Part shown: positions 1 through 21,844 of the stretch, piece by piece | Numbering within the stretch: position 1 is the first letter of the stretch | Layout: every line of letters begins with the position of its first letter | NCBI GenBank assembly: GCA_021613535.1 | Contig: CP075493.1 | Location: 6,448,001 to 6,512,000 of the forward strand | Length of the DNA stretch: 64,000 nucleotides | Source: Adineta vaga | Lineage: Eukaryota > Animalia > Rotifera | Direction of reading: 5' to 3' | Made by a program: the position numbers and the translations under genes | Notes under the pieces: generated by a model | The model's input: only the letters and a program-made list of their open reading frames with translations | What the model was told of the DNA's origin: nothing | The model's database searches: none

Positions 1-3000
1 GTTTTTCATGAAATTAAAAATCCCGATGATGTTGTTTTTCTTCTTTTGTTCAATGCTTGTGCTCAAACGGAAACAAAAGATGCACTGAAGTTAGTTAAAA
101 ATGTTTGGAAAAAATTCTCATCAAACTTTCACTCAAATTCATATATTGTGTCGTCAGTAATTGATGCATTGATGAAATGTGGTGATGTAAAAGAGGGAGA
201 ATCAGTGTTCCGAAACTCAACAACGAAAGATTTATCTATATATGGATCGCTTATGAAAGGTCTGTATTTGCTTAGGTGACACAGATAACAAAGCAGTGTG
301 ATTTTTTTTAGGTTATGTAAAAAATGAAATGCCTGAAAAAGCAATTGATATTTTTCATCAAATTGAAAGTCCAAATGATGTTATTGTTCTTCTTTTATTC
401 AATGCGTGCGCTCAATTGGAAACGGAAGATGCCCTGAATTTAGTCAGAGATGTTTGGGGAAAACTTCTCCCAGAATTTTGTTCCAACTCGTATGTTTTAT
501 CATCAGTGATCGATGCCCTGATGAAATGTGGTGATGTAAAGGAAGCAGAATTTGTATTTGAAAAATCAACAACGAAAGATTTACCTATGTTTGGAGCATT
601 ATTGAAAGGTTTGTACTCACTCTAATGATACTCTCATTAAAATATAGATATTTGTTTACTAGGTTATGTTAAACATGAAATGCCTGAAAAAGCAATTCAT
701 CTATTCGATCAGATAAACAATCCTGACGACGTTGCTATTCTTCTTCTATTTAATGCTTGTGCACAATTGGGTAACAAAGATGCATTAGATCGAGTTAAGA
801 ATGTTTGGAAAACGATTCCATTGAAGTTTTATACAAATACTAATCTAGTAGCATCATTGATCGATGCATTAATGAAGTGTGGTGACGTTGAAAGTGCACG
901 ATCAGTATTTGATTCATGTAAATCAAAAACATTACATATGTTTAACGCACTTATGAATGGTTTGTATCTATTTTGATTGCGAATGAAATCAAATGTAGTT
1001 GTTTATCTTCAGGTTATATAAAAAATCAAAAGTCTGAACAAGCGATCAGTATTTTTAAGCTGATTAAAACTCCTGATGCTGTTACAATCACCATTCTGTT
1101 GAATGCTTGTGCTCAACTGAAAACGAAAGAAGCATTGGAATTAGTGAAAGATGTGTGGAACAGACTTCCATCCGAATTCGTCTCAAATGTCTATGTTAAA
1201 TCTTCGATGATTGATGCCCTGATGAAATGTGGTGATGTAAAGGAAGCAGAATTTGTATTTGAAAAATCAACAACGAAAGATTTACCTATGCTCGGAGCAG
1301 TTATGAAAGGTCAGAAATTGTTTAGGATGGAAAACCTATAGTTTCATTCATATATTTTATTTCAGGCTATATTGTTAACGACATGGCACCTAAAGCAATA
1401 AGTCTATATAATGAAATAAAAAGTGGGTTTTTTTGAGGAAGAGAATCTCTCCATGAGAATATTGTATTTGGTGTGCTGATTTAGAAAATAATGCCAACCA
1501 ATTGAATGACATTCTTCATATACTTGCAATTAATGCTGCAGCTAAAACTGGAATGTTCTCGCAATGTCAATCGATCGTTAAAGCAATTCCAGTCGAGCTT
1601 TTGTCCACTCATAAATTTGCTGCGGCATTTATTGATATGTGGGTATGACCGCAAACTGTATTTTTTTAAAAGTTTTCGACAAGAGATATATTTATAAATT
1701 TAGGGCAAAGCTGGATCTATTGTAAAAGCAGAAGAAGTCTTTCAGCAGCATTCACCACTAGATCGTGCCGGCTATGGAGCAATGAGTAAGATTCTTGCAA
1801 AAATTTGCTTAAGAATTTTGTCTTTTTATTTTTTGTAGTTAATGCTTATGGATTGAATGGAATGGGTTTAAAAGCAGTTGAGCTTTTTCATCGTGTTCCG
1901 TCCGAATATATTGATGAACCAACCAATGTTTCTGTTCTTAATGCTTGTTCACATTCAGGTCTTGTTGACGAAGCTCGATCCATCTTCAACAATATTCAGA
2001 ACAAAACAGAGCGTATATATACTGTCATGGTAATGAACGTTATATGTTCTTTGTATCGCTTAATACTCAACTGATCTCCTTTTTTTGCAGGTTGATGTTC
2101 TTAGCCGAGCATTTCTTTTTGAAGAAGCTGAAGCATTGATCAATGAGTATGAACAAACTCATCCACCTTTGTTGCATATGTATAGTAAGTACATATTTCT
2201 TCGATTCGCCTTCGACTTTAAAAGAAAATATGCTTGGGAAAGAAGTATATATTTGAATCTGATTGGGAAATTAATTAGGGATGATCAGTTTTCATTTGAG
2301 AGCTGTTACTCTTTTTCTATACATTATTCAGTGGCTTTGATAGAATAAAACAATTATTTATGATATTTATTCAGAAACAAATACTATTTTGAATGATAGA
2401 CAGTGCGCACACAGATGAATAAACTTTCCCTGTTGGTTGCAACTGATAAACCAAAGCTCTTAGCAATAAAGTTACTTATCTTTAATTATAAACAAATATT
2501 CAAACAAAAATTACTTTCTTTTTTTTGTCTCAACTTTTGTGTAGTGGCATTATTGTCCGGTGCCAGAAATAGTAGAAACAAACATCTAGGTGAAAAGATG
2601 TATCATCGAATGAAAATAATCTTTCCGCAATCATCTGATCCACTGGTGCCAGCTACAGTACTATTATCAAATATTTATTGTGCAACAGGTGATTTAGAGA
2701 AAGCATCAACAATTAAAAATGATTTAATCAAATCAGGTGCAAAAAAACGAGTTGGTTTGACATGGACCGATACTAATGGTGAAATATTCGTAAGTTCATG
2801 ATCAAGAAAAAGTGTTTCTGTGGATATGAATTTTGTTCTTTTTAGGAATTTCGTGCACATGATCAATCTCATCCACGTTCTGCTGAAATATATATCGAAC
2901 TAGAAAAGATCTCAAGAGAACTCATTCAACATGGTCATACATAGAATTCCAGTTGGATCACACGTCCGATACAAGCAGATGAAACTGTAGAATCTGTACT

Positions 3001-3271
3001 TTGTGGGCATAGCGAAAAGCTGGCAATAGCATGGAATTTTGTCGCAAATCCCAATACAAAAATGATTCAAGTGACAAAAAACTTGCGAGTTTGTGGAGAT
3101 TGTCGTAAGTATTTCTTGGATTTTTGTTTTTATTCTCTAATTATCTATGGTATAGATGAAGCAACAAAATTGATTGCTGCGATTCGTAAATGTCATATTA
3201 TCGTTCGTGATGCGAATCGAATACATCACTTTGGACCTGATGGTGTTTGCTCGTGCAACGATTATTTCTGA
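1..3271 (+). CDS. PLS-class pentatricopeptide repeat protein with E1/E2/E+ and DYW deaminase domain, copy 1 (5' end outside window; in-frame TAG at 2942-2944)
   Basis: Exons read by hand: <1-259, 312-608, 663-959, 1013-1309, 1366-1422, 1485-1642, 1704-1785, 1839-2029, 2091-2184, 2545-2789, 2846-3104, 3156-3271; all introns GT-AG. PPR motifs (LFNACAQL, SLIDALMKCGDV, VLNACSHSGLVDEA), E motif (VLLSNIY), PG-box-like KKRVGLTW, then FRAHDQSHP, HSEKLA (HxE), KNLRVCGDCH (CxxC), IIVRDANRIHHF, and C-terminal CSCNDYF. Confidence 0.93.
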
Positions 3272-4200
3272 ACGATATCCTTCTTCATTTTGTATCGGTG
3301 AATTTCAGTTTTTTTCCATGTATGATTGAATCTCAATAAAAGAATTTATATTCATTTTTGTTTGTTTGTCGTTTTATTCAAGATATGGATGAGAGTTTGA
3401 GTATTCATTGAATACAGAAGTATTTGTTCGTAAAAAAACGCTGGTTTCTTTTCAAGATTTTCAATTGTTTTTATAACTTCTTTAGGTGTACCTTCGGCAA
3501 AAAAACATTTTTGAATTAATTTCTGAAATAGAAGATAATTCTTTTTAATAGCTTGATATGCTATTTTAATGTAATTAACTGTTGGATTGGAAAGATAATT
3601 ATGATTAGATTTATCATATAAATAATCATCAAGATTTTTTGCAAATATATCAAGAAGTTCGCTTGAATAATTTTCGATATGTTTAACAATTTCTTCTTCA
3701 ATTTCATATTTATTAGCATAATTCTCATCCCAATGATATAATGTTTTTTCTAAGAAAAAATTGTATTCTTTTCCATAAGTTAAAATTCATTTTCTTCCAA
3801 TGAATTTATTGTTACTTGAAATGTTGGAAGAGATTTTTGTACAATTATTCAACAAAAAGCAGCTCTTATTATAATCACATCCGGTAATGATGAATTGAAA
3901 ATATTTTCAAGTGATTGATTTAATTCATTTGAAATCTTTTGTTTTCTACTCGATTTTGGTGTTGAAATATAGATAATTTCCAAATGTAAGTAAACAAATA
4001 TTTAAAACATTAGATGAATATGACCCTTCAGTAATCAATTGCAAAGCAGCATAATATGCAAAATATTTTAAAGATTTATCTGTTTGATACTCAGAATATT
4101 TTTCCATCTCTGATAAAGTATTTGATTTAATTATTAAATAACAAGAAATATTTTCAATAATTTTTGAAAGATTTTTCTTAATTGATAAATTTAAATAATT
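1366..4200 (+). repeat. Segmental direct repeat, unit A (3' half of PPR-DYW gene plus 3' end of NACHT gene)
   Basis: Nearly identical to 18342-21116 (offset 16916 nt after the long intron); identity stops abruptly at 4200/21116. Confidence 0.95.
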
Positions 4201-6854
4201 AATTATTTATTTTGCAACTTTCAAGCTCATAATTTTTCCATACGATGAAAAATCATTCCATAATTGATCTAATTCTTTCTTATTTGTAAAGTTTCCATAT
4301 CAAATGCTAATTCTGTCATATACATTAATGATAGAAGAAGAGTATTCGATAGATAAAATGATGTTTTTTTAATAAAATATTTTTTGAAGAAAATAGTAGA
4401 ATTTAAATGAAAAACTTCGGAGAGTTTGGAATTTTTTTAATAAATATGAATAAACAATGTGAAAGATTAGAATTACTGAGTTTTTGTTTCAATGCTATGA
4501 ATACTGCTTCTTGATTGTGTTTATCATTGGAGAATTTCTCAATAATAATTTGAGGCATTTGATGAAACGCTAATGGTTGATATTCGTGTATTGAATAACA
4601 TCGCATGAATAATAATGTTCCTATTAATAATGGAAGATTTCGCAATAAATTTTGCAATAAATTGATCATTTTTAATTTTAAATCTTCTCTTCGTTTGATT
4701 TCAAAGATCAATGGGTTTTCATATTCAAAAGAATACTAAAAGCAAAGATTTGTTAGATTGGATTATTTATATTTGTTACAATAATATACATTTCATGACT
4801 TTCTTCAATTGAAATATTTAAACATTTAATAACTTGGAAACGATATTGAGCTTGAAAAAGCCCTGCGAATACAAGTGATGTAATTAAGAATTGTAAATCT
4901 TTTCGATCATTTTCTAGTAAATTATTCGCATGAAAAACACGTTGTCTTTCTATTCCAGTAAGTTTTTTCAAATCGATTAGTTCATCAATACACATTTGTT
5001 CAAAGAGAAGCGTTTACTAAACTAACGATATTTTTCGTTTTGTTTTGTAATAAAAGAGTGAGAAGATAATTTTCAATCATATAATTAGGAAATGGTAATC
5101 GAAATCTAGATAGAGCAAGATAATAGTTCGAATTATTCGTATCAATATGTTCTAAATGTATTAAAGATTGTAATAAAAATAGAACTCGTGATAACAAATT
5201 CATTTCATTGATGAAATCGTTAATCATACAATACTATAAATTTTGTAGATGTTGTTGTATAAAAGTAAATGATTTTGATGAAATTTGTTCAGCAATTTCT
5301 ATTGAATTTTTTTCATTTGTATGATTTTTGTTATTTCGTATAGGAAGAAACTATTTTAGTGTAAATGAAAGAATAAAACATAATAATAATGGATTGGTTA
5401 TGAAGAATTTGGCACGTTTTTTAAACATATATTCAATAATATTCGATCGTCGAGTTGATAAATATTTCATCATTTCTTGATTTAATTCAATACCTTCATC
5501 GGACGAAATCTTTAAAATACTTTTTTCAGCTTCTATCATCCATTTCTTAATACATATTTTTGATTTTTTTATGTTCCATTAATACTAATGAATAATGATG
5601 AATATAGGAACCAAGAATTGGATAAAATTGATAACCAATTGTACGACTTATTAGAATTAGTTGATTTTCACTCGTTGTTTTCGGTGGTCCTTTTTCATAA
5701 TAAACTGTTTTTCCATCAGGTAAGATTGATCTGTGTGTTATATCATCAAATGAAGAACTAAAGTCAGGAGTACATATAAGACCAATAATTTCTTCTCTTC
5801 GACGAACATCATCAATTTCATCAAGTCCATCGAGAAGAATCAATGCGTGACCACGATCTATAAATTCTTCAAAGATATTTTCTTTCTCATCAGAAAGAAT
5901 ATTAATATAATCTTTTAATGTTTTAGTTTCATGTTGATAAAGCCACGTGGAAAATTCATTAATACGAACTAAAATTGGAATACGAGTTGGAACGTATCGA
6001 TTTCTATTTAAACTAACTTGTTCTTGATTATGCTAAGCAGCTTCAGCAAAGATATACATAATCCATCGAAAAAGTTTAGATTTTCCACTTCCCGGATTCC
6101 CTAGAATAACAATACATCGATCATATTCTAACAGTTCTTCAATTGTTTTTGATTTACCAAATCCAAAGAGTTCTTCTTCAATCGAAGGTAAAAATTGTTC
6201 AAATCATGATTGACTGTTCGACATGTTCCAATAAATGTAGCAAAATGACCATCAATATTTGCTAAAAAACGATTTGAACAATCAAGTCTTATATCAATAC
6301 ATTGCAGATGTTCTTCAATTGAACTTTTTTGAATGCTTGATGGTTGATTTAATTGACAATTATTACGAAGAAAATCATTGATATTTTCTATTAAATCATT
6401 TACTTGTACTTTTGAATAAAGATAAATACAACTTTGAAGATATTCGTTGATAAATTTCGCATTTTCATTTATTAATTGTTTTAAATTCTTTCGTTTCCCA
6501 AATTTTCGTTGAAATTCTATTTCACGTTGCATTAGTTTCTTCTCATTTTTGATTTTTTTAAGAAAATTATTCCAATTTTTGTCCATACTTGCTTCACCAT
6601 TTGGACCTTTAAGCACATAAATTAGATCATCATATAGACTAAATCCAAAAATCTTCCACAAGTTTGTTATTGTTACTCATTAAGCCATCTAATTGTCGAC
6701 AAAATAATTCAATCCATTCATTTTCTGTTGAATTTAGTTTAATAAAAAGATCACGAATATCATTTAAAGTACGTTGATAAATAACAGTTTTCAATGTTTC
6801 GTTTTCTGATAAATATTCGATTGACTTTATCGCACGTGTAATTACCTTATGCAT
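3374..6854 (-). pseudogene. Decayed NACHT-family NTPase gene
   Basis: Minus strand gives Walker A CIVILGNPGSGKS (~6079-6117), then RIPILVRINEF and Walker B GHALILLDGLDEI (~5820-5852). The frame is broken by stops (e.g. TAG after FAEAA) and frameshifts into many short ORFs. Likely C-terminus ...SHPYLE* at 3374. Confidence 0.8.
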
Positions 6855-7133
6855 AACTTATTCAACAAGGAATAATTTTTATGATGCAATGTTTTAGTTT
6901 TATAAAAATATAGCATTTACTTGTAACGATTTTAAGACAGAAATAGGTTTAGCGTTGATAGAATACCATTGTCTTTTTTGTTTCTTTATGCTATATTGTT
7001 TCATATAAAGCAAGTGTGCACATCTTTTCCTCCAGAATAGAGAACGAATTTGAATGTAAGTGGAAAAGAAAATAAATATAAGAGAAATTTGAGACAGTTT
7101 GTTAAAGTCACATAGGAGGTATTGCACATAAGC

Positions 7134-7400
7134 CATCTCATAACTTTGCTCAATGATCATCTCCAATTTGGCTGATATTTGTACAGTAGGTAGACCATGT
7201 CAAGTTAGAAAGAAATCCCAAAATTTCAGCTCAAACGAATAAGCCGTTCCAGAGATATAAACGTTACAAGTGCCGGGACAGATGTTTAATTTGAGCACTT
7301 TTTCGTCGAACTGCTTTTAGTAAATTTTGAATATCTCACGAATAATATAAGATAACAACGAGATTTTTTTACCACGAATACTCTCCGAGATGGGCTATCG
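7134..7400. mobile_element. Possible DNA-transposon/MITE relic
   Basis: Non-coding segment with ATAACTT...AAATTT...GAGATAT / ATATCTC motifs reminiscent of DNA-transposon subterminal regions; no clear TIR pair found. Confidence 0.25.
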
Positions 7401-8179
7401 TTTGATAAATTTGACACTGATTACAGCAGCTCTTAATTTCATTATTTAATTTATATTTAAGTACTAATTTAAGAAAAATCAATAATATGGTTTTATTAGC
7501 AAGCAACGCTCATCTGTAGGATTCTCTGACCCCTTTCTGAAAGAATTATAATGATGATTAACGCATCTATATTCTTTAAAAAAACTCTCTTAAAGAGAAG
7601 AAACACTGATCAAAATTTCTTTCCTTTATTTTATGTTTTGATTTTGTTCAGCATCATTGAAAACCTCTAGATCCAAATTTTTGGCGCATTTGGTTGAACG
7701 AATAAAAAAAATACATCAATTCTACTGACTAAGCACTCCAAAAACTATTTTGAGATTTTGTCAAAAAATATGCCTAGAAATCGAGGTTTGTTTAGACTCT
7801 AAGAGCTATATGGAATTATTCGTTTGATATATTAAAAGATACCGCATCGAAAACTAAACAAAATCCTCTATTTAGATATTATCTTTCTGTGGACTGATCG
7901 GTACTAGTCGAACATAAAAATACGTAAATTTGATGAGTATGATGATATTAATTGTTTCCTGTAATGACAAACTGGTTGAGTAGCTAACCGCCTCTCACGG
8001 TATGATGTTTATTGACTACTCTACATGACCAGAATGTCCCTACTTCACAATAAGACACACGCTTATATAGAGAGAGGAAGAGAAGTGTACATACAGACCA
8101 ATGAAGCGAAGATAAGAACGAAAGAATGAACCGAGAAGTCAAACGGTAATACGACCGATAGAATGATATTGTTCTCGTC

Positions 8180-9000
8180 ACATTTCCATCTATTGGCTTT
8201 CATACATATAATATCTGATGTGATGAATAAAACTTCAGTAGAAAGAAAATAATTGATAAGAAACTGTTCAAAAATATCAACTACTTCAGATTTGAATTTA
8301 AAAGACGCATATGTCAAATCAATCAACATCATGTCACATAAATTTGGTTGTGTAGGACCATATTGACGTAATAAATTTACTGATAAATAACGAAATCATT
8401 GAACATATGATAATAAACAAATCAATTGATCGAAATTAATTGAATCATCGATGATTAGTTATTCGATTGAACTATATGAGAAAGCCATAACGTATTGTGT
8501 ATATTTCGGAAAGTAGAGGTAATTGATCTCAAATTGTGTAGAAGGGAAATAATATGAAAGTGTTCCACAATAGATTTTTAATGTTGAGAAAATCTGAAAT
8601 AAAACAGTTTCTCGTAATATTAACGTAAAATACGATATCAACTAAAAATTAAATAGGTTTCTAAAAAAAACAGTCGAATCTTCCAGTTAGGTCTTCTATT
8701 ATAAACCTATAGATTTACGTAAATCAATAGACATCATTATATTCTACAGAAAAATAAAATAATAGGAATCTATTGAAAGACGATAATATGAGAAAGATAT
8801 ATCACATGGTGCTTTAAACAAATATTACCTTTAAAAGACAATGATCAAGAAAATATTAAAACATTTATGATAATTAAATGAAGATAGAGCTCCTCTAATA
8901 AATTACTGCTTATGTCTATGAATAATAAAAAAAATGAGTGGAAATATAGATGAGATTTACGAAACGTTAGTTTTTAATTTTGTTCTCATTTCGTAAGTCT
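8180..9000 (-). pseudogene. Degenerate relic of a lineage-specific F-box/leucine-rich family gene
   Basis: Minus-strand fragments YSSIE*LIIDDSINFDQLICLLSYVQ*FRYLSV...DIFEQFLINYFLSTEVLFIT...MKANRW resemble the leucine-rich body of expanded bdelloid F-box proteins (recalled pattern); contains internal stops. Confidence 0.4.
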
Positions 9001-10729
9001 AAATATGGAAGTTTTTATCTCTTTTGCTATGAAAATAGAAAAGAAGAACTTCTTCTACACAAGACATTAACAGTATTATCTGTTTTCCTTTGAATCTAAA
9101 ACAATGAAGAAAAGAGCGAACAATTATATACTCTATAATTTTGGTCAATATGTATATCTTTTCTGATAGATGAGAATTTTTTTTATCTGAAAACATCGAG
9201 TATCAAAAAATAAAGAAAAAGAATGTATTGAATTTTTTGTATGGATTCAATAGTTATTTATCTAAGTATGACAATCGATTATATTCGTTTACAGTCGATT
9301 ATTTTAAAATTTATAAGATCATCTTTCTAATGACTCTTGAAAATGTCTTCATTTTTATCTTGTTTATGATCCAAAACTCATTTGAATTCTCATTGTATGG
9401 ATGCTGTGAAATTGTTCAAAGGTTATAGATGACTATATTATATGAGTTCGATATTTTTTACAAATATATTTAGAACATTTCAATCAAAATTGATCAAATC
9501 AATTCAAACGAAGTTTATCCTTAATTATGCCATCTCTTTTCGGCTAATGTTAAATATGATTTGTTAAAATACTAATATTATATGAAAGGAAATATCCATT
9601 TAGTGTAAATATGACAATTATATACTTCATCAATACATTCATAGTCAAAAAGTCCCTGATCAATATGCCACTGGTTCAATGAAAAAAATGTCATAATATA
9701 TGCGTTGCTGGTATATTTTCGAAGAATCTTCATGACAATTGATGAATTTAGAAAGGCAGTTAACATCGATTTCTCAAAAAAAACAAAATCGCCATATTAG
9801 ACAAACAAACTATTATGGATGTATATTCAACAACTAAATGTTCATTATCATGTGTATTTAATTGAACGTATACAGCAAGAAAAATTTCAATAGATCTAGT
9901 ATAGTCGGTTTCATCGACACCGATGATGAATGTATTCAAAAAGAAATATGTGTGAACTCGAGATAGAACTACTTCACCACTCGCGAATCATTGCTACTCT
10001 TGTAATTCTCTGAATGTCAATGAGAGAATAGGAATGGAATATAAGTACCAGTTACCATATAAACATGAAACACTCTTTGTGTTTACAAATGCATCTCGCC
10101 GCATTTCGTTGAAACTCGAATATATCGGATAATGCATCCAGATGCGATTTATACCGTAAATTATGTCTATACGCAGTTGTTAGTAGAGCCTGAGATGGAA
10201 ACTTTTCTCTAGAAAGTTTCTATTATAATTATGTTGAAATATGTACGAATACAAAACATCTTTCTATCTTTAAACATCAAACGTCAAATTCAAGAAGCAA
10301 CTAAATGAAGTTATAAAACTCGTCATCCACTCTATCTTGACGTCAACCCCAACTCTCTAGCGTTCCAAATATAGCAAAGATTTCCGATGTACTCAGGTAT
10401 TAAACTAAGCTCTCCATTACGAAAAATATTCAAAATGAAGTTCGGAAGCATCTTCTGCCACGTTTTTAATCACAACATAATGTTTAAGAGATAATTTCCC
10501 AGTCGTTCGCAATAGATCAGTGATAGGAATGAGTGCAGCAGACCCATTAAAAGTCTTATATGATGCGCCAACGGTCGTCCTTCTACTTCATACCCTTTGC
10601 ATTGTTCAAAATTTTTGATGAGACACTCTCTTAAGACTAGACAGCTTCAGAAGATATGACCTTATACCCATCAAACTTCCCGCATAACTGATAAATTATA
10701 GTGCATTTTAAACACGCACGAGTGATTGG

Positions 10730-11424
10730 ATACTAGGTACAGTACTTTGTACTTTTGGTATTTTTCCTCGAGAAATTAGGGTACTTAGTACATTTTTCTA
10801 GCACATAGACTTATGCCTAGTATTTATACTTTGTACTAAATACTTAAATTTAGGTACAATTACTTTAGTACAATGTAATTTAGTACCGGTACTATAGTAC
10901 ATGTGAACTGAGTACGGTATTAGTACTTCGTATAAGTACATTTGGTTAATATTTTGTTTTTGCATAATTTTGAAGAGTCTATTCATAGGCTAGAATTGCA
11001 AAATCTTTTAGAACATTATAACTATATTTATCTATTACCACTCGAAATTAAATAAAAATAGTATTGCCCATAAAAATGTATATAAATAATTATTAGATTT
11101 TTATCTTCAACTTTGTATTCCTTCTATAGATGTCACTAACGGATCCATATAGCGAGTATAAGTGCTAAAAATAATTATTAAAACTAAGAATGATATTTAA
11201 TACAAGTACATGTGATTGATTATTGATACTAGTACAATGTACCTTAGTAAAAGTACTAAAGTAAAAATATTTTAGTACAGGTACTAGAGTCCAAGGACTA
11301 TAGTGCATCAGTATTTAGTACTGTACTACAGTGACTGTACTAATGTAAAATACTTGATATTCTAAGTACCGAATATATTTGCGAAGTAAAAAGTAAATGT
11401 ACTGTAGTAACTGTACCGCTACTG
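10730..11424. repeat. GTAC/AGTAC-rich interspersed element, probably a non-autonomous DNA transposon
   Basis: About 26 GTAC words in ~690 nt by hand count, against ~2 expected at this base composition. They form two clusters (10737-10940 and 11206-11416) around an AT-rich core. Confidence 0.55.
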
Positions 11425-11647
11425 ATGCGATCACTGACACTCATGTTCGCTTTCTCGGACATACACAGATCAATAGTTTAGATGCAAAGCCATCTCTCAC
11501 ACACCAAACTCATGAGTTTACAACAAAAAACGCCATCATCCGATTAATACGACTTCGAAGCACAATGTGCAATTATTTTTCTACACATCAGTTTCCTCCA
11601 AAAACATTCTCCAGAAAAAAACACTACAAAACAACGTTCCTTGAACC

Positions 11648-12836
11648 CTAACTATACAATCTCAACCTGTTTCCTAAAACATTCCGAAAGTATTCTGCTC
11701 GTTCTTTCCCAATTTCATTGCCCCAAAGACTTAGTCTGGTGAGTGCCTATAGACGACAGATAGCATGGACATGTCAACTAGGTGAAGGGCGAATGAATAT
11801 TACCATGTTTGTTCGCAATGCCTCAACAATATGTTGTGCTCCTTGATCCCCGATTTGATTGATCCGGAGATCTAGTGTGGTGAGTGTCTATAGACGAGAG
11901 AGATAGCATAAATGTATCAACTAGGTGAAGAGCGAATGAATATTACCGTGTTTGTTCGCAAGGCATCAACAATATGTTGTGCTCCTCGTTCCCCGATTTG
12001 ATTGTGTCCGAAGTTTAGTGTGGTGAAAGTCTATATATACAATGTATGTGTAAGGCAATCGGAACTTCAAATCAACGCTTTTCAATTAGATGTAGTATTA
12101 TAAAAGAGTTGTCGTTGTGGTGTGTGAAAGAGTTCAGAAAGTGCTTAGTTTGGGTTCATCGAGTAAACAGAAAAATCGTTGCTTGACTGATTATTACTGA
12201 GTTAATGTTTTAATCGTCTCATGAGTAGAGTGAGTACTGTACTGAAGGTAATGATACTTCTTCATTTCAAATGGTTTTGGATTGTTGTTTTTATAGTTGG
12301 TTTGCGAGAGATAGTATTGAATCGAGGCAGAATATGAAACAGTTCACTTTATTTTATTCGGTGTGTTTCAAAGATAGTTCTGGCATTTTTTAGGAGTTGC
12401 AATACAGACATTCGTTTGAAATGGGAAAGGTGATTAATAATTCTGCGGTTTTATTCTTGTGCGGCACATGAGTGCACGTTTAATAAGATTAAAATTGTAT
12501 GGACACGGATAGAAAAGAACAGGTGAGAGGAAGGGTTGTTTTAATAGCATCAGTCAATGTTGTGTTTGATTGACTCGTAGAAATTACTCCGGAATTTTAA
12601 ATGTTTTTTTCTTTGTGTAAACTCATCAAGTTAGATAATGTGGGGCTCATGCGTGCTTGAACAGACGAGAAAATAGTTAAAGCATTTAGGAAACTTACTT
12701 GATAGCGATGATAAATGTTAAGAATTTGATTAAAACGTTGGGAAACATTTTGCATTGAAAAAAATAGTGTAATATTAGTCAGATGATCCAAAATCCGATA
12801 GACAAGTTCGATCGGTAATGGTGAAAATGTGTACAT
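11648..12836 (-). CDS. Small F-box-like + RI/NLRC3-type leucine-rich repeat protein (134 aa), one LRR per exon
   Basis: Exon 12836-12699 MYTFSPLPIELVYRILDHL...HRYQ (F-box-like); 12030-11947 TFTTLNFGHNQIGERGAQHIVDALRTNT; 11887-11804 TLTTLDLRINQIGDQGAQHIVEALRTNM; 11746-11648 ALTRLSLWGNEIGKERAEYF...LYS*. All introns are phase 0, GT-AG. Confidence 0.8.
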
Positions 12837-13325
12837 ATTTTCTTCAGATTCCACAAAAGTTTGTTCAAAATATAAGCTATTGAATATATTTTGTTGCTTA
12901 TGAGAAGAAATTCGCTTTATTACTGAAAATATTTTATTTTTGTTATTGAAAAAAGAGAACGGAATCTGAGATCGAAATAAAATACATTCAAGTTTTAATG
13001 GCCAGAGACCGCCAGTGTCAACGTGATTCACGTTGATGCCGACGACAATAGAGTTACGAAATTGTATGCAGCTTATTTTTTTATTTATTTCGACCGAAGT
13101 CTGACGATTTCAACAAAAGCGAATAGTTAGTTTATATAGAAAGATCGCGTTAATGTATATGTTGAGTATGGAGTTTCGTCTGTTGTGTATGATTATGAGT
13201 GTCAGTATACTCTCAAGGTACGTATTTTTTATTAGTAATTTTTTCGTTTCACAAAAGAGTTCATTTTAAGAAAGGATACTTTTGCACGTGATATTCAACA
13301 AAATTTCAATCAGAAAAGAAAATCT

Positions 13326-13447
13326 TTGAGGGTAGGTATCGATAGTCTATTCTTTTCACGCCCACGCTGCCGGAAGTTTTATAGGATTTGGGGATCCAGG
13401 ATCCGCTTTTTTTCCTTGAACACCCACACCCACAACCACACCCTCAA
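13326..13447. mobile_element. Short MITE-like element
   Basis: 8-bp inverted ends TTGAGGGT...ACCCTCAA with CCCACA-type subterminal repeats; GC-richer than flanks. Confidence 0.45.
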
Positions 13448-14933
13448 TATCAATGAGAGTCGTCATAAAAATATCATTAATGTTTCAAAACACTCAAAAT
13501 GAGCATCTACGTAATAAAACATGAAATATCAGGACATTTTTAAGCAAAAAGGAAAACATGAGAAAAATAAACACGCTGTGGGAATTGCATTCGTCGTAGA
13601 AGATCTTAGTGAAGAAAACAAGGAAGTATTTTTTCTAGTTCATTTTGAATGCATTGAATAAAATTACCTTATAAATACTCTTAAGAAGAATTTACATTTC
13701 AACAGCAGGAATGAGTTTAGAGATGAATTATACAAAAGATTTTGTAAGTGCTAACATCCGTCATGATCGAAGTATTTGATGAAAAAGAATTTCGTTTATT
13801 TCTTGGTTTCGAAAATCAAGAAAAAGATAAAGCAAGAGATTTAACTCAATATGATGCTCAAGCATTTGCTGTACGTAAAAAATCATGTTACTTTGTTGTT
13901 TTTTCTCGAAACGAATTTTAGTCATCTCCAGTAGTTCAAATATTAACATATGAAATTGTTTTAGATGTTGCTGTTGATGATTTTTTTAAAGATCCATATA
14001 GTTATGAAGCTTACACAACAGATATAACTAATGATAAAGATCATAAATATGAGCTTGGATCTGATGTTAGAATTAGTGCATTAGATGTTCCAAAGAAATT
14101 GTTCAATATGATGCAATTGGAGCAATGTTTTATTATGCAGACATGAATCAGAATTTGGATTTTTTCACATTCAGTTTAATTGAAAAAGAACTTTTATTCT
14201 TGCCGAAATGTTTAATTAATTTTTCTCTTTTTAGTTTCTTTTTTTCTTAAATAAATAATCAAATTATTTTCATTATCAGTCACGATTGATGATAATTAGG
14301 AAAAAAGTATGTATTGAACAGCACACAACCGTGTTCAACTTCTGTCTTTCAATAAAGAAAATGAATGAAAAATAGTTGTACAGTGTATGTAGAATTCTAA
14401 CAAATATGATCATTGTTTTATATGCTTCCTTGTAATTCTTATGTTTATTTTATCGAAATAAAAATACAGTAGTGAACAGTACAGTGTGAAAGAGAAAAAA
14501 GAATATCGAATTATTAGAATGCAATGAATCACATCATAGAAGATTTATACAGACACTAAGCAACGAATAGACCATACAAAACTGTTAATTGTTCACTGAT
14601 GTTTGTTTAACCAACTTTGTGTTATGTTTGAATGAAAACTGGACCATTCAGATCTGAAAAACATGGGCATTATTAGTTATTAGAAAAATTATTTCGACTA
14701 ACCTTTTACAATTATCTCTTTTAAACGCATTGTAATACCTTGAATAGATACAGTAAATTTATCCGATGAATATTTGACTTCTTCATTATCTCTATCTTCA
14801 ATTCCAACACATAGATAAAGACTTGATGCCTTGTCGCTTGCAGGTAGATTAATTACGATTGTTTTCGGGAGATAGGAAATATCTTCTGCAAGCAATATTT
14901 TAGAATCACATCCTTCTGTGCTTCCCAAAACTA

Positions 14934-15132
14934 CCCAGGACGATCATTCCGGTGGTCGGAAACGGCGTCTGAAACGACCGAAAACGGTTAGAAAAAAGAA
15001 ATTTACTGCCTTAGTTTTGACCGTATTTCTATACATTTAAGGGTTAACGGATTACGGTGGCGTACTAGTGCCGGTTTTCGCCGTTTTTCCATCGTTTAAG
15101 GCAGTTTACGACGCCGCTTTCTTTCACCTGGG
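14934..15132. mobile_element. ~200-bp MITE with CCCAGG...CCTGGG termini
   Basis: Inverted ends CCCAGG/CCTGGG with TA on the left and GTA on the right; interior rich in inverted AAACGG/CCGTTT-like words; non-coding and GC-rich relative to flanks. Confidence 0.65.
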
Positions 15133-16785
15133 GTAATATTCTTTGATTATTAAAGAATAAATCTTGGCCACTGATATGTTTGATTAGAAAAACTGCACGT
15201 AACATCTAAAGTACAACCAATTAAAGTCATAAATAATACAATAGATTAGTTATTAAATGTAAGAAAATTTCAACTACTTATCTAAATCCAGATATTGAAT
15301 ACAATTTAATATAAAAACCTTGAAAGAAAAAAAGTAAACCAAAAGAATTAACACTAATAGAGACATCGTTTTATGGAGTATATAATCTCATAATTTTCCT
15401 CCTTTTCTATTTGTGGTCAGTTTAAATGAATGGATAATATTTGGAATAAATTCGTTCGTTCTTCTTTTCCTGCAAGTTGAGTATCTGTATGTAATGAATA
15501 ATACTTTTTTGATCTTTTCATGAATAAAACAAAATTTTATTTCGTCTGTGATGACTGCAGGGTCATTGATTTGTTCAGTATAAATGAGAGTCACATAGTT
15601 TGATAATTTAATTTTATGAAAATCGTCGACTATTGATCGATAATAATTGACTGGTTGGTTTTGATTGTTATTCTAAAAAAATTTATTCAGGTTTTGACAC
15701 ATTTTCGTATTTAAAGGAATAATTCTGTAAACGTATTCTGTAAGATTTCTTGATTAAGAGATATTTCAATTTTAAAAAGACAGTCAATTACTTTTCTAAA
15801 ATAGACAAAAGCAAACAGATCATTAATCATATGATACAACATGTTCCTCATATTTCGCTTAATCACCACATTTTTAAAGATAAGAATCGTTCTTCAAGTA
15901 TAATAATTCAGTTCCGAAATGTTATTAGTACTGTGAATGCATCCAGTAACACTGATGAATGATCGACTCTGTTCCTTGTAGTGGTGATAAAATAATAACG
16001 ATAATAATCACTATCGCTTCATCTCAACACATTATGTCTCATATGCACAGTTGTTTCGAATGTTATTCATCCTAGAAAGAAAGTTTTTTTTTCAATAAAA
16101 TATATCAATTAGCTCATGAAAATTATGTTAATAATGATTTAATTGACATAGATTTACTAAACCATTATTCTGGATTTATTCCAATTCATTGTTTCAGAAG
16201 ATTTTCTACTTTCAGATCAATTAATATTTATGTATTTTCACTTTCCAACATATTCTATCTTATTGATAAGCACTACTCGTAATGATCTGTGTCATTTCCA
16301 GAATCATAATCACAGTTTGCTATAAGCTTTTTCAGTCATTCATGGGTAGTTACAGGTATTCATCTATGGATTAATCTCTCTGTAGACTAGTTAAGTCTAC
16401 GGAAGATTATGTCTATGATGAATAACAGCATAGAATGATCGAATGAAGATTAAACTATCTCATCAGATAGCGACAACTGTTGACTTGACACCTATTTGCT
16501 GTGAAGAACAGATCGCCTTCTAACCTATTCGAAAAGAGAAATGACCAGTAATGAAACAGAGCTGGAAACTCCGTCTCCGTTCGTTAGCTTGTCATCTTGA
16601 AATCCAAAAACAGAACCGAAGTAGACCCAGGCAGACTAGCACCCAAAAAGGGCGTATGGGATGTGAGGAATACTAATTTCTATTTTCAATTAAATTTGTA
16701 TCGCAAAAAATCCAGATAGAATGTTTGCTTCTAGACTTAGTCGTTTCACTGTCTGTCAATTGAGAGACGTAAATATTATTTTCCA

Positions 16786-19700
16786 ATGTGGTCAAGATTA
16801 CTGTTAAATAAAAATTACAAAAATGTGTTATTTGTTACAAAGCTCTCGAAATCCATCCAATCCAAGATCGATTTGGGATATCAGATGAAATTATTGAATG
16901 AGAAGAAACAGTTTAAACAATCGATTGATTTATTTGAACATTCGAAAGATCAGAATGTGAAACAGCTTTCAAGTTTCATTATTTGTCAAGCGTTGAAAGC
17001 GTGTGGGCAACTCGGTGATTTACAGCGTGGTTCAAATATTCATCGTTTCATTTCTTCTAGCTCAAGCATTGATCACGTTGTATTAACCGCATTGATTCAG
17101 TTTTACAGTGAGTAAACCGAACAAAAAAATGTCATTAATTTTTGAATGAAATAGTGCAATGCAATGATGTAAAACGTGCTGAATCTGTTTTCACTGAAAT
17201 AGCTAATAAAGCATTATTTCACTATGGAGCGATGATGAAAGGTAAAACGTTTTGCAATATGTGAAAAAATTGTTCTTACCTCTGTTTAGGTTATGTTAAA
17301 CATGGAATGCCTGAAAAAGCAATCAATCTATTTGATCAGATAAACAATCCTAATGATGTTACTATTCTTCTTCTATTCAATGCTTGTGCACAATTGGGTA
17401 ACAAGGATGCATTAGATCGAGTTAAGAATGTTTGGCAAACGATTCCATCCAAATTTTATACAAATACTAATCTAGTAGCATCATTGATCGATGCATTAAT
17501 GAAGTGTGGTGATGTGGAAAATGCACGATCAGTATTTGATTCGTGTAAATCAAAAACAATACATATGTTTGGTGCACTGTGGATGGTTTGTATAAGTTTT
17601 GAATACGAATATAATTAAGTAGTTTTGTTTATCTTCAGGTTATGTCAAAAATGGAATGCCCCAACAGGCGATTAATCTATTCGATCAGATCAAAGCTCCG
17701 GATGATGTTACTATTCTTCTTCTATTCAATGCTTGTGCACAATTGGGTAACAAGGATGCATTAGATCGAGTTAAAAATGTTTGGAAAAGTATTCCATCCA
17801 AATTTTATACAAATACTAATCTAGTAGCATCATTGATCGATGCATTAATGAAGTGTGGTGATGTGGAAAATGCACGATCAGTATTTGATTCGTGTAAATC
17901 AAAAACAATACATATGTTTGGTGCACTAATGGATGGTTTGTATAAGTTTTGAATATGAATGTAATTAAGTAGTGCTGTTTATCTTCAGGTTATGTCAAAA
18001 ATGGCATGCCTCAACAGGCAATTGATATATTCAAGCTAATTAAATATCATGATGTTGTTATTATCACCATTCTCTTGAATGCTTGTGCTCAGCTGGGAAC
18101 GACGGAATCGCTGAACTTAGTGAAATATGTTTGGAAGAGACTTCCACCAGAATTCTCCTCGAATGGCTATGTTCTCTCTTCTGGAATCGATGCATTGATG
18201 AAATGTGGTGATGTAAAAGAGGCAAAATTTGTGTTTGAAAAATCAACAACGAAACATGTAGCTATGTTTGGAGCACTTATGAAAGGTCAGAAATCGTTTA
18301 TGATCGAAAACTAAAAGTGTCATTCTGATGACTTATTTCAGGTTATATTGTTAACGACATGGCACCTAAAGCAATAAGTCTATATAATGAAATTAAAAGT
18401 GGGTTTTTTTGAGGAAGAGAATCTCTCCATGAGAATATTGTATTTGGTGTGCTGATTTAGAAAATAATGCCAACCAATTGAATGACATTCTTCATATACT
18501 TGCAATTAATGCTGCAGCTAAAACTGGAATGCTCTCGCAATGTCAATCGATCGTTAAAGCAATTCCAGTCGAGCTTTTGTCCACTCATAAATTTGCTGCG
18601 GCATTTATTGATATGTGGGTATGACCGCAAACTGTATTTTTTTAAATGTTTAACAAGAGATGTATTTATAAATTTAGGGCAAAGCTGGATCTATTGTAAA
18701 AGCAGAAGAAGTCTTTCAGCAGCATTCACCACTAGATCATGCCGGCTATGGAGCAATGAGTAAGATTTATGCAGAAATTTGCTTAAGAATCTTGTCTTTT
18801 TATTTTTTGTAGTTAATGCTTATGGATTGAATGGAATGGGTTTAAAAGCAGTTGAGCTTTTTCATCGTGTTCCATCCGAATATATTGATGAACCAACCAA
18901 TGTTTGTGTTCTTAATGCTTGCTCACATTCAGGTCTTGTTGACGAAGCTCGATCCATCTTCAACAATATTCAGAACAAAACAGAACGTATATATACTGTC
19001 ATGGTAATGAACGTTATATGTTCTTTGTATCGCTTAATACTCAACTGATCTCTTTTTTTTGCAGGTTGATGTTCTTAGCCGAGCATTTCTTTTTGAAGAA
19101 GCTGAAGCATTGATCAATGAGTATGAACAAACTCATCCACCTTTGTTGCAAATGTATAGTAAGTACATATTTGAGTTTGATTTGAAGATTAATTACGAAT
19201 GATGCGGTTTCAATCGAGAGCTGCTACTCTTTTTCTATGCGTTATCCAACAGTTTTGATAGAATAAAATAATTATTTATGATACCCATTCAGAAACAAAA
19301 ACTAGTTTGAGCGATAAACAGTGCTCATTTAAATGAATAAACTTTCTCTGTTGGTTCCAAATGAGAAAAAACTTCTCTTAACACTAGATCCACTTCTCTT
19401 TAGTTGCAAAAAAAGATTCAAATAAAAATGATTTTCTATCTTGTCTCATCTTTTGTTTAGTGGCGTTATTGTCCGGTGCCAGAAATAGTAGAAACAAGCA
19501 TCTAGGTGAAAAGATGTATCATCAAATGAAAATAATCTTTCCGCAATCATCTGATCCACTGGTGCCAGCTGCAGTACTATTATCAAATATTTATTGTGCA
19601 ACAGGTGATTTAGAGAAAGCATCAGCGATTAAAAATGATTTAATCAAATCAGGTGCAAAAAAACGAGTTGGTTTGACATGGACCGATACTAATGGTGAAA

Positions 19701-20187
19701 TATTCGTAAGTTCATGATCAAGAAAAAGTGTTTCTGTGGATATGAATTTTGTTCTTTTTAGGAATTTCGTGCACATGATCAATCTCATCCACGTTCTGCT
19801 GAAATATATATCGAACTAGAAAAGATCTCAAAAGAACTCATTCAACATGGTCATACATAGACTTCCAGTTGGATCACACGTCCGATACAAGCAGATGAAA
19901 CTGTAGAATCTGTACTTTGTGGGCATAGCGAAAAGCTGGCAATAACATGGAATTTTCTCGCAAATCCCAATACAAAAATGATCCAAGTGACAAAAAACTT
20001 GCGAGCTTGTGGAGATTGTCGTAAGTATTTCTTGGATTTTTGTTTTTATTCTCTAATTATCTATGATATAGATGAAGCAACAAAATTGATTGCTGCGATT
20101 CGTAAATGTCATATCATCGTTCATGATGCGAATCGAATACATCATTTTGGACCTGATGGTGTTTGCTTGTGCAACGATTATTTCTGA
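16786..20187 (+). pseudogene. PLS-class PPR-E-DYW gene, copy 2 (complete locus; 1-nt frameshift at end of exon 3; in-frame TAG at 19858-19860)
   Basis: Exons 16786-17107, 17155-17241, 17290-17585 (296 nt), 17639-17935, 17989-18285, then from 18342 the same 3' exon series as copy 1, ending HSEKLA...CGDCH...CLCNDYF* at 20187. Confidence 0.9.
17290..17988 (+). repeat. Tandem duplication of one PLS exon+intron unit (349/350 nt)
   Basis: 17290-17638 and 17639-17988 are near-identical over most of their length, including the intron (gtttgtataagttttgaata...gtttatcttcag). Confidence 0.9.
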
Positions 20188-21116: not shown

Positions 21117-21844
21117 CGTTATCCATTTTTCATTCTAATTCTTCTCACCTCATTCTTGATCCATATATACTTTCTCATACGATTCCATGACAGATGCTCC
21201 CGAGGACCAGATCAAGTCCCAATCAAAAGCAAAACTTACTCTCTGTGTCGCCCACACACATCTTGTTAATCAAAAGTTAAGGAAAACAAAAAGAAAAAGA
21301 AACATATGAATGCATATCACATTCGTACCCGTGCATACGAGATTGACATATATAATTATGGAGCATGCACAAGTGAAAAATTTCAGAAAAAGAAAACGAA
21401 CACATAACAATACAAACAAAGAAAAACTCATCACATTGATTTAGTTATATCTGAGAGCACAGAAGAAGACAAAGAAAATATGACAAGAGAAACAAGGAAA
21501 AGAAACGAAATGCAAAACTCGAGCAATACCATTAAATGTGGCACAAGTAGAAAAATTAGACACCGAATTTTTCTTGTTCTTGAAATCACCTCCAAGAACA
21601 CATGAAACCGGTTGTCAGAAGACAAGAAAAAATAAAGGAATGTAACGAAAAACATATATTGATCATTCAGATAAATATATATATATATATATGTGTATAG
21701 ATAGATAGTATATGTGTGTTGCACGAACAAACACTATCATTCGATAAACGTAAACGGAAAGTATGTTGATTGTATTATATACAAAAAAGAAACGAAAAAG
21801 GAAAATGAAAAAGCAAAAATTGATTTGTTTTTTGTTTTTTCTCA

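What the first reader, a model, noticed from the sequence alone, without database searches (positions are those of the whole stretch)
1..20187. Animal PPR-DYW genes with a cassette-built RNA-recognition array: one PLS period per symmetric exon on a constant deaminase half
Seen: the array exons are 297 nt (312-608, 663-959, 1013-1309, 17639-17935, 17989-18285; 17290-17585 is 1 nt short). All are phase 1-1, with the intron always in the Gly codon of LMKG|Y, so each exon is one 99-aa period (31+37+31). The two loci have near-identical 3' halves but different numbers and orders of cassettes. Copy 1 is ...alpha-alpha-beta-alpha and copy 2 is beta-beta-alpha, where alpha ends TTK(D/H) and beta ends KSKT. 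Known: plant PLS-DYW proteins are C-to-U editing factors reading about one base per motif, and most angiosperm ones are intronless. DYW-PPR genes have been noted in bdelloids as likely horizontal acquisitions, with no function I know of. Inference: frame-neutral cassettes let duplication, unequal crossover or exon skipping reprogram specificity in 3-base steps on a fixed catalytic module. This would be a diversifying RNA recognition/editing system, either mitochondrial or anti-parasite.
Basis: partly seen in the sequence, partly recalled or inferred. Interest (0 to 1): 0.9.

Follow-up and report, generated by a model that had tools for sequence, protein, structure and literature searches.

The report
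Exon-cassette PPR-DYW genes, both truncated
Two neighbouring copies of a plant-type RNA-editing-factor gene in a bdelloid rotifer build their RNA-binding repeat array from identical-length 297-base exons that multiply by unequal recombination, but both copies carry the same stop codon in front of the deaminase, so neither can encode the enzyme.

Summary
In the window, five exons are exactly 297 nt and one is 296 nt. All are ag|GT...G|gt, phase 1-1, split in a Gly codon, and each carries one P-L-S period of 31+37+31 residues. Copy 1 starts upstream of the window and has 8 cassettes; copy 2 has 3.

The architecture is family-wide. It occurs in at least 8 loci of this genome and on 3 contigs from other organisms. 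Exon trees, co-duplicated introns and chimeric cassettes show that arrays grow by in-register unequal recombination inside each gene. The copies' flanks differ by about 2%, while their cassettes differ at dS 0.3-0.4, a mosaic history that gene conversion would explain.

The functional reading is not supported. Both copies share TAC>TAG before the HxE/CxDCH site. Copy 2 also has a frameshift and a decaying DYW remainder. RNA contigs show both copies spliced as modelled, the TAG unedited in copy 2, and no cassette skipping. PPR code positions are not hypervariable.

The bdelloid DYW family is already published, but I found no account of its exon architecture. The scan's first readers had noted the same locus from the neighbouring window.

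One thing is unexplained: lesions in several paralogues cluster at the E+/DYW boundary.

The parts
1..259 (+). Copy 1, cassette 5 of 8 (alpha). Partial: the exon starts 37 nt upstream of the window.
   Evidence: L031 7963-8259
312..608 (+). Copy 1, cassette 6 (alpha), 297 nt, phase 1-1
663..959 (+). Copy 1, cassette 7 (beta), 297 nt. It is 97-98% identical to cassettes 1 and 3, which lie upstream of the window.
1013..1309 (+). Copy 1, cassette 8 (alpha), 297 nt. It is 97% identical to cassette 2.
1366..2789 (+). Copy 1, six constant exons (1366-1422, 1485-1642, 1704-1785, 1839-2029, 2091-2184, 2545-2789). They carry a further PLS-like unit, P2-L2-S2-like motifs and E1/E2.
   Evidence: Exon ends mapped from the RNA joints of copy 2 through the alignment. 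Pfam PPR and E_motif.
2846..3104 (+). Copy 1, exon with the E+ motif and the first part of the DYW deaminase (HSEKLA, CGDC). It is interrupted by TAG.
2942..2944 (+). In-frame TAG of copy 1. The intact paralogue at C1:8.76 Mb has TAC here, and the rest of the family has Tyr or Phe.
3156..3271 (+). Copy 1, last exon: the His of CxDCH, RDANRIHHF, CSCNDYF, then TGA.
15749..21129 (+). Duplicated block holding copy 2. It matches the copy 1 block, which runs from upstream of the window to window 4213.
16786..17107 (+). Copy 2, exon 1, starting at the ATG. The N-terminus is basic and free of acidic residues (presequence-like; my inference).
   Evidence: c2-specific RNA contigs with 0 mismatches; loose ends at 17107 and 17155
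17155..17241 (+). Copy 2, exon 2. It ends in an S motif plus P(1-9) and a split Gly.
   Evidence: It is identical to the same exon of the C1:8.76 Mb paralogue.
17290..17585 (+). Copy 2, cassette 1 (beta), 296 nt. A 1-nt deletion near its 3' end shifts the frame.
   Evidence: The junction from exon 2 is seen in RNA contigs.
17639..17935 (+). Copy 2, cassette 2 (beta), 297 nt
17989..18285 (+). Copy 2, cassette 3 (alpha), 297 nt. It groups with the last cassette of the C1:8.76 Mb paralogue.
   Evidence: 100/96
18342..19705 (+). Copy 2, six constant exons (18342-18398, 18461-18618, 18678-18759, 18813-19003, 19065-19158, 19461-19705).
   Evidence: Every intron is seen as a GT..AG joint in RNA-like runs X1, X2 or X7 and not in DNA run X8.
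19762..20020 (+). Copy 2, E+/DYW exon with TAG at 19858-19860.
   Evidence: (contigs with 0 mismatches across the TAG)
20072..20187 (+). Copy 2, last exon. It carries derived changes at conserved sites (R>H in RDANR, S>L in CSC).

Best explanation
The region holds two tandem paralogues, 18.7 kb apart, of the horizontally acquired plant-type PPR-E-E+-DYW family of bdelloid rotifers. The genome is 100.8 Mb in 6 contigs; that it is Adineta vaga is my inference.

Gene anatomy:
- Exon 1 starts with a presequence-like N-terminus.
- Exon 2 ends in an S motif plus the first 9 residues of a P motif.
- Then come n cassettes. Each is one 297-nt phase 1-1 exon holding P(11-31)+L(37)+S(31)+P(1-9), with a ~53-nt intron in the Gly-10 codon of the P motif.
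- Eight constant exons follow, carrying a further PLS-like unit, P2-L2-S2-like motifs, E1, E2, E+ and DYW.

How the array arose and changes: the periodic intron follows from how the array grows. One ancestral intron was copied along with its cassette by in-register unequal homologous recombination between cassettes. This is shown by breakpoints inside exons, introns duplicated with their exons, and cassettes that cluster within genes. Array length therefore differs between paralogues (1 to 8). Ectopic conversion most simply explains the near-identical flanks of the two window copies.

State of the two copies: neither encodes a deaminase, because both share TAC>TAG 33 codons into the E+/DYW exon, upstream of HxE and CxDCH.
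- Copy 2 also has a 1-nt deletion in cassette 1 and six derived amino-acid changes after the stop. It is a transcribed pseudogene.
- Copy 1 is otherwise open. Its duplicated cassettes evolved under purifying selection. It is either a very young pseudogene or an E+-type truncated protein (not decided).

Inferred, not shown: the intact family members are mitochondrial site-specific C-to-U RNA editing or RNA-binding factors, as in plants.
For: Architecture.

Full copy 1 and its 8 cassettes.

Family-wide 297-nt units: found in L031-L036, L042 and L048. They are also on three public contigs, L051-L053, with GC 0.36-0.47; L051 has a TGF-beta neighbour, so it is from an animal.

Within-gene cassette clades:
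- c1 e1/e3/e7, support 99/80
- c1 e2/e8/e4, support 100/99
- L33, four of five cassettes, 100/100
- L34 e2/e4/e5, 99/97
- M52 e1/e2, 100/98

Duplication at DNA level: introns are co-duplicated (i1=i3=i7, i2=i6), and cassette 2 is cassette 8's head joined to cassette 6's tail and intron.

Mosaic history:
- Flanks and constant exons of c1 and c2 differ by 0-5 per 100 nt.
- In the long intron c1 is closer to the C1:8.76 Mb paralogue than to c2.
- Exon 2 of c2 is identical to that paralogue.
- Cassette dS is 0.29-0.40, against 0.036 in the constant half.

Loss of the deaminase: the TAG replaces a Tyr/Phe conserved in the family. Polarised by the paralogue, c2 has 6 nonsynonymous and 0 synonymous changes after the TAG, and c1 has 0 and 2.

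Selection on copy 1: its beta cassettes show omega 0.04-0.26, with 16 synonymous and 6 nonsynonymous differences.

Transcription and splicing:
- All 8 constant-half introns appear as GT..AG joints in X1, X2 or X7 and none in DNA run X8.
- c2-specific contigs cross the TAG with 0 mismatches.
- c1-specific letters at 19571 and 19627 are present in RNA-like contigs.

The family and its transfer from plants are published: PMC13386178 (60 DYW genes in A. vaga, 58 expressed) and PMC4202320.
Against: - The age of the TAG relative to the cassette duplications in copy 1 is not resolved. Copy 1 shows no decay after its stop, so it may still be used (by readthrough or as an E+-type protein).
- The RNA evidence comes from assembled contigs whose RNA label is a guess. 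It cannot show levels, rare isoforms or partial editing.
- Cassette-to-cassette junctions of copy 2 were not recovered.
- No function has been tested for any member.
- The species identity of the genome and of contigs L051-L053 is inferred.
Confidence: 0.8

Rival explanations
1. First reader's reading. The cassette exons are an adaptive device: frame-neutral cassettes are duplicated, crossed over or skipped in splicing to retarget a fixed deaminase. This would give a diversifying RNA recognition and editing system, either mitochondrial or anti-parasite.
For: Array length and order differ between very close paralogues while the flanks differ by only about 2%. Cassettes turn over independently in each gene. 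All cassette exons are symmetric, so skipping would stay in frame. Purifying selection acts on cassettes.
Against: - Both window copies lack a translatable deaminase.
- No skipping joint was seen; the two odd joints are non-canonical and fit mis-laid paralogue contigs.
- Breakpoints lie inside exons, so phase symmetry is not needed.
- Code positions rank 25th to 56th of 98 in variability and are often non-canonical, for example Gly at P5 and Thr or Val at S-last.
- Near-identical repeated cassettes would read a periodic RNA, which is unlike a single editing site.
Confidence: 0.1
2. Copy 1 (and perhaps L034 and L044) is a functional E+-type PPR protein. It would be truncated right after the E+ motif, keep its RNA-binding array and use a DYW deaminase supplied in trans, as plant E+ proteins do. 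The recurrent stops at this boundary would then be selected.
For: - Lesions cluster at codons 32-41 of the E+/DYW exon in independent paralogues: TAG at 33 in c1/c2, TGG>TGA at 37 in L034, L044 and L010, a frameshift after 37 in L014, and a fragment starting at about 41 in L003. About 30 other loci are open there.
- Copy 1 and L034 are otherwise open through their cassettes and the constant exons recovered.
- They hold the two longest arrays, 8 and 6 cassettes.
- Cassettes of copy 1 are under purifying selection.
- Copy 1 is transcribed.
- PMC13386178 lists an expressed E+ subgroup in A. vaga.
- An earlier scan note reports a stand-alone E-DYW gene in this genome (s1-502191, unchecked).
Against: - The clustering was noticed post hoc. 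TGG is among the most stop-prone codons under GC>AT bias.
- Copy 1's DYW remainder shows no decay, which fits a very recent stop as well as anything else.
- Copy 2 carries the same stop and is clearly decaying.
- A stop 162 nt before the last exon junction would expose the mRNA to nonsense-mediated decay in many animals (general knowledge).
- No trans partner was tested.
Confidence: 0.2
3. Both copies are plain dead pseudogenes, and the long array of copy 1 is neutral repeat expansion after loss of function.
For: The shared nonsense codon. The frameshift and the 6:0 nonsynonymous-to-synonymous changes after the stop in copy 2. The largest arrays are in genes with a stop.
Against: Copy 1's triplicated beta cassettes differ mostly at synonymous sites (16S:6N), and their dS of 0.05-0.11 exceeds the c1-c2 constant-half dS of 0.036. 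The duplications therefore predate the last common state of the TAG-bearing segment and evolved under constraint. The rest of copy 1 has no other lesion in the exons examined.
Confidence: 0.3
4. The two copies are an assembly artefact: two haplotypes of one locus placed in tandem.
For: The assembly is haploid for what I take to be a diploid animal. The flanks are 97-99% identical.
Against: About 11.5 kb of unrelated sequence lies between the blocks. Cassette dS of 0.3-0.4 is far above allelic levels. Contigs with 0 mismatches on copy 2 exist in an independent DNA run, together with copy-1-type letters.
Confidence: 0.03

Closest known systems
Bdelloid rotifer DYW-subgroup PPR genes (PMC13386178, Mol Biol Evol 2026; PMC4202320; Schallenberg-Rudinger et al. 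2013 as cited there)
   Same: Same family: a PPR array plus E, E+ and DYW, in a bdelloid-type genome, present in many copies, expressed, and regarded as acquired from plants.
   Different: In the parts I read and searched, those papers treat domain trees, counts and expression. They do not treat exon structure, cassette turnover or the broken state of these two loci.
Land-plant PLS-class PPR-DYW C-to-U editing factors (for example moss PPR56, PMC10482289)
   Same: P-L-S triplets, E1/E2, the E+ region, and a DYW domain with HxE and CxDCH. The motif register matches the plant consensus (KCG in S, ACA in L), as recalled from my own knowledge.
   Different: - The P motif is 31 rather than 35 residues, and L is 37.
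- The C-terminus is DYF.
- There is an intron in every triplet, whereas most angiosperm genes are intronless.
- Code positions are often non-canonical.
- In the window copies the deaminase part is behind a stop.
Plant E+ subgroup PPR proteins (truncated DYW, deaminase supplied in trans; my own knowledge)
   Same: The reading frame of both copies ends a few residues after the E+ motif, where plant E+ proteins end.
   Different: Here the end is a point nonsense mutation, with the DYW sequence still present downstream. No trans partner has been shown.
Tandem exon duplication in repeat proteins with symmetric phase 1-1 exons (general metazoan pattern; my own knowledge)
   Same: One structural repeat per symmetric exon, and growth by unequal recombination with the introns copied along.
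   Different: Here it occurs in a horizontally acquired helical-repeat RNA-binding array, and the unit is three PPR motifs cut inside the P motif.

Membership tests
PLS-class PPR-DYW editing factors | Tandem PPR motifs in P-L-S triplets | tested here: met
   Pfam PPR above cut-off in every cassette. The 99-residue period is 31+37+31, with conserved KCG and NACAQ landmarks.
PLS-class PPR-DYW editing factors | E (E1/E2) and E+ motifs between the array and DYW | tested here: met
   E_motif scores 26.9 bits against a cut-off of 27.3 on the single exon, which is borderline. Eplus_motif scores 29.9 against 24.
PLS-class PPR-DYW editing factors | DYW deaminase domain with HxE and CxDCH in one open reading frame | tested here: not met
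   The sequence is present: PF14432 at 51 and 38 bits, with HSEKLA and CGDC|H. However, an in-frame TAG lies upstream of HxE in both copies. It is met in the paralogue at C1:8.76 Mb and in about 23 of 30 sampled loci.
PLS-class PPR-DYW editing factors | C-terminal DYW tripeptide | tested here: inconclusive
   The end is DYF; other family members have DYF, DHF or DFF. PMC13386178 says the tripeptide varies in non-plant members.
PLS-class PPR-DYW editing factors | Canonical position-5/last code residues that specify bases | tested here: inconclusive
   P5 is mostly Gly and P-last is Asp or Asn. S5 is Thr, Ser or Ala, and S-last is Thr, Asp, Val or His. Many combinations are non-canonical.
PLS-class PPR-DYW editing factors | Organelle targeting and site-specific C-to-U editing activity | not testable with these tools
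   Only a basic, acid-free N-terminus was seen. I found no report of editing in A. vaga.
Bdelloid DYW-PPR family | Close paralogues in the same genome sharing intron positions (Gly-10 of the P motif before the first cassette; CxDC|H) | tested here: met
   There are 69 PF14432 matches at about 40 loci, most of them split at profile position about 58. An ag|GT acceptor before the first cassette is found in nearly all loci examined.
Plant-like E+ subgroup (truncated, trans-DYW) | Reading frame ending after E+, with evidence that the truncated protein is maintained and partners with a DYW protein | tested here: inconclusive
   The position of the end fits. Maintenance is unclear: pre-stop omega is 0.32 on 15 changes. 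A partner was not tested.

The most novel reading that the evidence does not exclude
In bdelloid rotifers the acquired PLS arrays would be rebuilt continually by cassette-level unequal recombination. Stops placed precisely at the E+/DYW boundary would arise repeatedly and be kept, splitting the family into deaminase-bearing members and long-array E+-type specificity factors (copy 1, L034) that use a deaminase in trans. That would be an independent animal replay of the plant DYW / E+ division of labour.
Probability: 0.15. Interest if true: 0.75.

Novelty: new variant of a known kind. Interest (0 to 1): 0.45.

Why it matters
The family itself is published, so its presence in an animal is not new.

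What is new, as far as the papers I could search show, is the gene architecture. One P-L-S triplet sits in each symmetric 297-nt exon, and this is conserved across diverged paralogues and across species.

The introns act as built-in markers. They show directly that the triplet is the unit by which a PLS array grows and shrinks, and that arrays turn over much faster than the rest of the gene. This gives a tractable natural system for asking how PPR target specificity evolves after horizontal transfer.

The finding also carries a caution. The two loci in this window cannot make a deaminase, so functional work should start from an intact paralogue. The clustering of lesions at the E+/DYW boundary deserves a proper test.

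Tried and rejected
- Cassette skipping. The only cassette-region joints in RNA contigs (17513>18189 and 17542>17988) are non-canonical (GT..TC, GT..CA) and have a short side or many mismatches. The second fits the normal e1-e2 junction of the C1:8.76 Mb paralogue laid on copy 2. I rejected both as evidence of skipping.
- Editing of the TAG. Copy-2-specific contigs cross it unchanged. Partial recoding cannot be excluded from contigs.
- Hypervariable code positions. Not found.
- Fetching the remaining 20 family loci.
- Self-BLAST at 92% identity missed the short duplicated cassettes. I replaced it with a window-by-window comparison.
- Literature. I found no report of the exon structure of rotifer PPR genes or of RNA editing in A. 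vaga.
- Spliced model. All searches were exon by exon, by reference. dN/dS was summed per exon, leaving out split codons.
- Reads tool.
- Not attempted: intron positions in plant or protist donor genes, a formal recombination test, and a targeting-peptide predictor.
Full report
**What is there**

The window is AT-rich eukaryotic DNA (GC about 0.30). It lies at C1:6,448,001-6,512,000 of a 100.8-Mb genome in 6 contigs. From the size, the chromosome number and the gene content I take it to be the bdelloid rotifer Adineta vaga; this is an inference.

The finding's exons are as described:
- 312-608, 663-959, 1013-1309, 17639-17935 and 17989-18285 are 297 nt each.
- 17290-17585 is 296 nt.
- Each follows ag and precedes gt, and each is cut after the first base of a Gly codon.

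Searched exon by exon, Pfam finds the following:
- PPR repeats in all cassettes;
- the E motif in 2547-2789;
- the E+ motif in 2846-2941;
- DYW_deaminase in 2945-3103 and 3158-3268.

**Full gene models**

Copy 1 begins upstream of the window, with its ATG at L031:6050. It has eight cassettes in the order beta, alpha, beta, alpha, alpha, alpha, beta, alpha. The window holds the last three and most of the fifth.

Copy 2 lies wholly in the window:
- ATG at 16786;
- exon 2 at 17155-17241;
- three cassettes;
- eight constant exons ending at 20187.

Each cassette holds residues 11-31 of a 31-residue P motif, a 37-residue L motif, a 31-residue S motif and residues 1-9 of the next P motif. The intron sits in Gly-10 of P. 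As a result, position 5 and the last position of that P motif are encoded by different exons.

**RNA evidence**

The reads tool gave assembled contigs only. In three RNA-like runs (X1, X2, X7), every intron of the constant half of copy 2 appears as a GT..AG joint. None appears in the DNA run X8, and the 302-nt intron has no RNA depth.
- Copy 2: contigs with zero mismatches cover its exon 1, the exon 2 to cassette 1 junction, and the DYW exon across the TAG.
- Copy 1: its specific letters at 19571 and 19627 are present in RNA-like contigs.
- The C1:8.76 Mb paralogue: its specific letters at 19961, 19983 and 19987 are also present.

So all three genes are transcribed and spliced as modelled. The TAG of copy 2 is unchanged in the contigs that cross it. 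No cassette-skipping joint was seen, which is weak evidence because contigs drop rare forms.

**Both copies are broken**

A three-way alignment with the close paralogue at C1:8.76 Mb (L032) shows TAC (Tyr) where both window copies have TAG. This is codon 33 of the E+/DYW exon, upstream of HSEKLA and CGDC|H. Across the family this residue is Tyr or Phe.

Copy 2 also has a 1-nt deletion in cassette 1. Polarised by L032, it has six derived amino-acid changes and no synonymous change after the TAG, including changes in RDANR, CSC and HSEKLAIAW. Copy 1 has none and two.

So copy 2 is a transcribed pseudogene. Copy 1 is otherwise open, and its status is undecided.

**The architecture is a family trait**

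PF14432 finds 69 matches at about 40 loci, many of them near chromosome ends. A cassette profile finds exactly 297-nt phase 1-1 units in eight or more loci, with 1 to 8 cassettes each. An ag|GT acceptor before the first cassette is present in nearly all loci examined.

A protein search with one cassette returned fragments on public metagenome and Logan contigs. Three of these contigs (L051-L053) have GC of 0.36-0.47, and one has a TGF-beta gene next door, so it is from an animal. Each carries three 297-nt cassettes with ~52-nt introns at the same codon. The intron is therefore old and shared between species.

**How arrays change**

In exon trees, internal cassettes group within genes:

| Group | Support |
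|---|---|
| c1 e1/e3/e7 | 99/80 |
| c1 e2/e8/e4 | 100/99 |
| L33, four of five cassettes | 100/100 |
| L34 e2/e4/e5 | 99/97 |
| M52 e1/e2 | 100/98 |

A terminal cassette type, and the last cassettes of copy 2 and L032, group across genes or species.

In copy 1 the introns are duplicated with their exons (i1=i3=i7; i2=i6). Cassette 2 is the head of cassette 8 joined to the tail and intron of cassette 6. Cassette 4 is chimeric too. Breakpoints thus lie inside exons. This is in-register unequal homologous recombination, which keeps the frame whatever the intron phase.

The periodic intron is most simply the one ancestral intron copied along with each new cassette (inference).

**Mosaic history**

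- Copies 1 and 2 differ by 0-5 per 100 nt in the promoter, exon 1, most constant exons with their short introns, and the 3' flank up to window position 4171.
- In the long intron, copy 1 is closer to L032 than to copy 2.
- Exon 2 of copy 2 is identical to that of L032.
- Cassette dS between the copies is 0.29-0.40, against 0.036 for the constant half.

Either the flanks were homogenised by gene conversion or the arrays were replaced. In both cases the array evolves on a different schedule from the rest of the gene.

The three beta cassettes of copy 1 differ mostly at synonymous sites (16 synonymous, 6 nonsynonymous; dS 0.05-0.11). So they were duplicated in a gene under constraint.

**What is not supported**

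- The residues that set base specificity in plant PPRs are not among the variable columns (ranks 25 to 56 of 98). They are often non-canonical, for example Gly at P5.
- Nothing points to an anti-parasite role.
- I found no report of RNA editing in A. vaga.

**An unexplained pattern**

Lesions in the DYW part of paralogues cluster at codons 32-41 of the same exon:

| Locus | Lesion |
|---|---|
| copies 1 and 2 | TAG at codon 33 |
| L034 (6 cassettes) | TGG>TGA at codon 37 |
| L044 | TGG>TGA at codon 37 |
| L010 (decayed) | TAA at codon 32 and TGA at codon 37 |
| L014 | frameshift just after codon 37 |
| L003 | fragment whose homology starts at about codon 41 |

About 30 other loci are open there. 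L034's cassettes and the constant exons I could recover are open apart from that stop; one short exon was not found.

The 123 DYW codons offer 41-46 codons one step from a stop and 10-16 transition paths. The cluster is therefore unlikely by chance, but it was noticed post hoc. It could reflect selection for clean E+-type truncation, leaky UGA decoding, or a mutational hotspot.

**Comparison with what is known**

- The bdelloid DYW family and its plant origin are published. PMC13386178 reports 191 PPR genes and 60 DYW genes in A. vaga, 58 of them expressed. PMC4202320 also covers the family.
- The text I searched says nothing about the exons or introns of the rotifer genes.
- First readers of this scan noted the eight cassettes, the chimeric cassettes and the shared TAG on the neighbouring window. 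I tested these notes here and they hold.

**Verdict**

- The evolutionary part of the interpretation (duplication and unequal crossover of cassettes) is supported.
- The mechanistic and functional part is not supported for these loci. That part comprises skipping, a fixed active deaminase and a diversifying system.
- Interest is moderate: this is a new gene-architecture variant of a known family, plus an open question about boundary truncations.

Noticed in passing
window 2942-2944 and 19858-19860; L034:7554-7556; L044 (minus strand) about 6032-6034; L010; L014; L003: Stops, a frameshift and a truncation in independent DYW paralogues cluster at codons 32-41 of the E+/DYW exon. Three of them are independent TGG>TGA changes at the same Trp codon. 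The two longest arrays (8 and 6 cassettes) are in genes with such a stop.
   Followed up: partly
window 4400-8350, minus strand: A string of short open frames lies between the two PPR copies. One has an LLDGLDE Walker-B-like motif typical of NACHT/NB-ARC NTPases. Pfam gave no hit on the pieces tried, so it may be a decayed or intron-rich gene.
   Followed up: partly
L031:1-3231 (C1:6440001-6443231) and window 21587-24814: A further 3.2-kb block is 97.8% identical between the sequence upstream of copy 1 and the sequence downstream of copy 2. The duplication is therefore not a simple tandem of one unit.
   Followed up: no
window 24752-25282 (+); 35806-36522 (+); 49399-49932 (-): Ordinary animal genes: an intronless RbsD/FucU mutarotase-family frame (1.3e-36), a two-pore/K+ channel exon (Ion_trans_2) and an immunoglobulin-domain exon.
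   Followed up: no
L001 / L039 (C3:12.78 Mb) and L013 (C5:14.69 Mb): These are divergent DYW genes whose deaminase region is one open frame without the CxDC|H intron that the rest of the family shares. L001 has CIDC and ends in DHF. They may be a separate acquisition or retrocopies.
   Followed up: no
L051:7369-7480: On the other-species contig L051, the last DYW exon is in two frames (a frameshift after RDANRIHHF). Broken copies therefore occur in other species too.
   Followed up: no
window 19945 and 19957: All contigs of the 2013 DNA run X8, and most RNA contigs, read G at both places, where the reference copy 2 has A and C. This is either haplotype or strain variation or an ongoing exchange with copy 1.
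   Followed up: no
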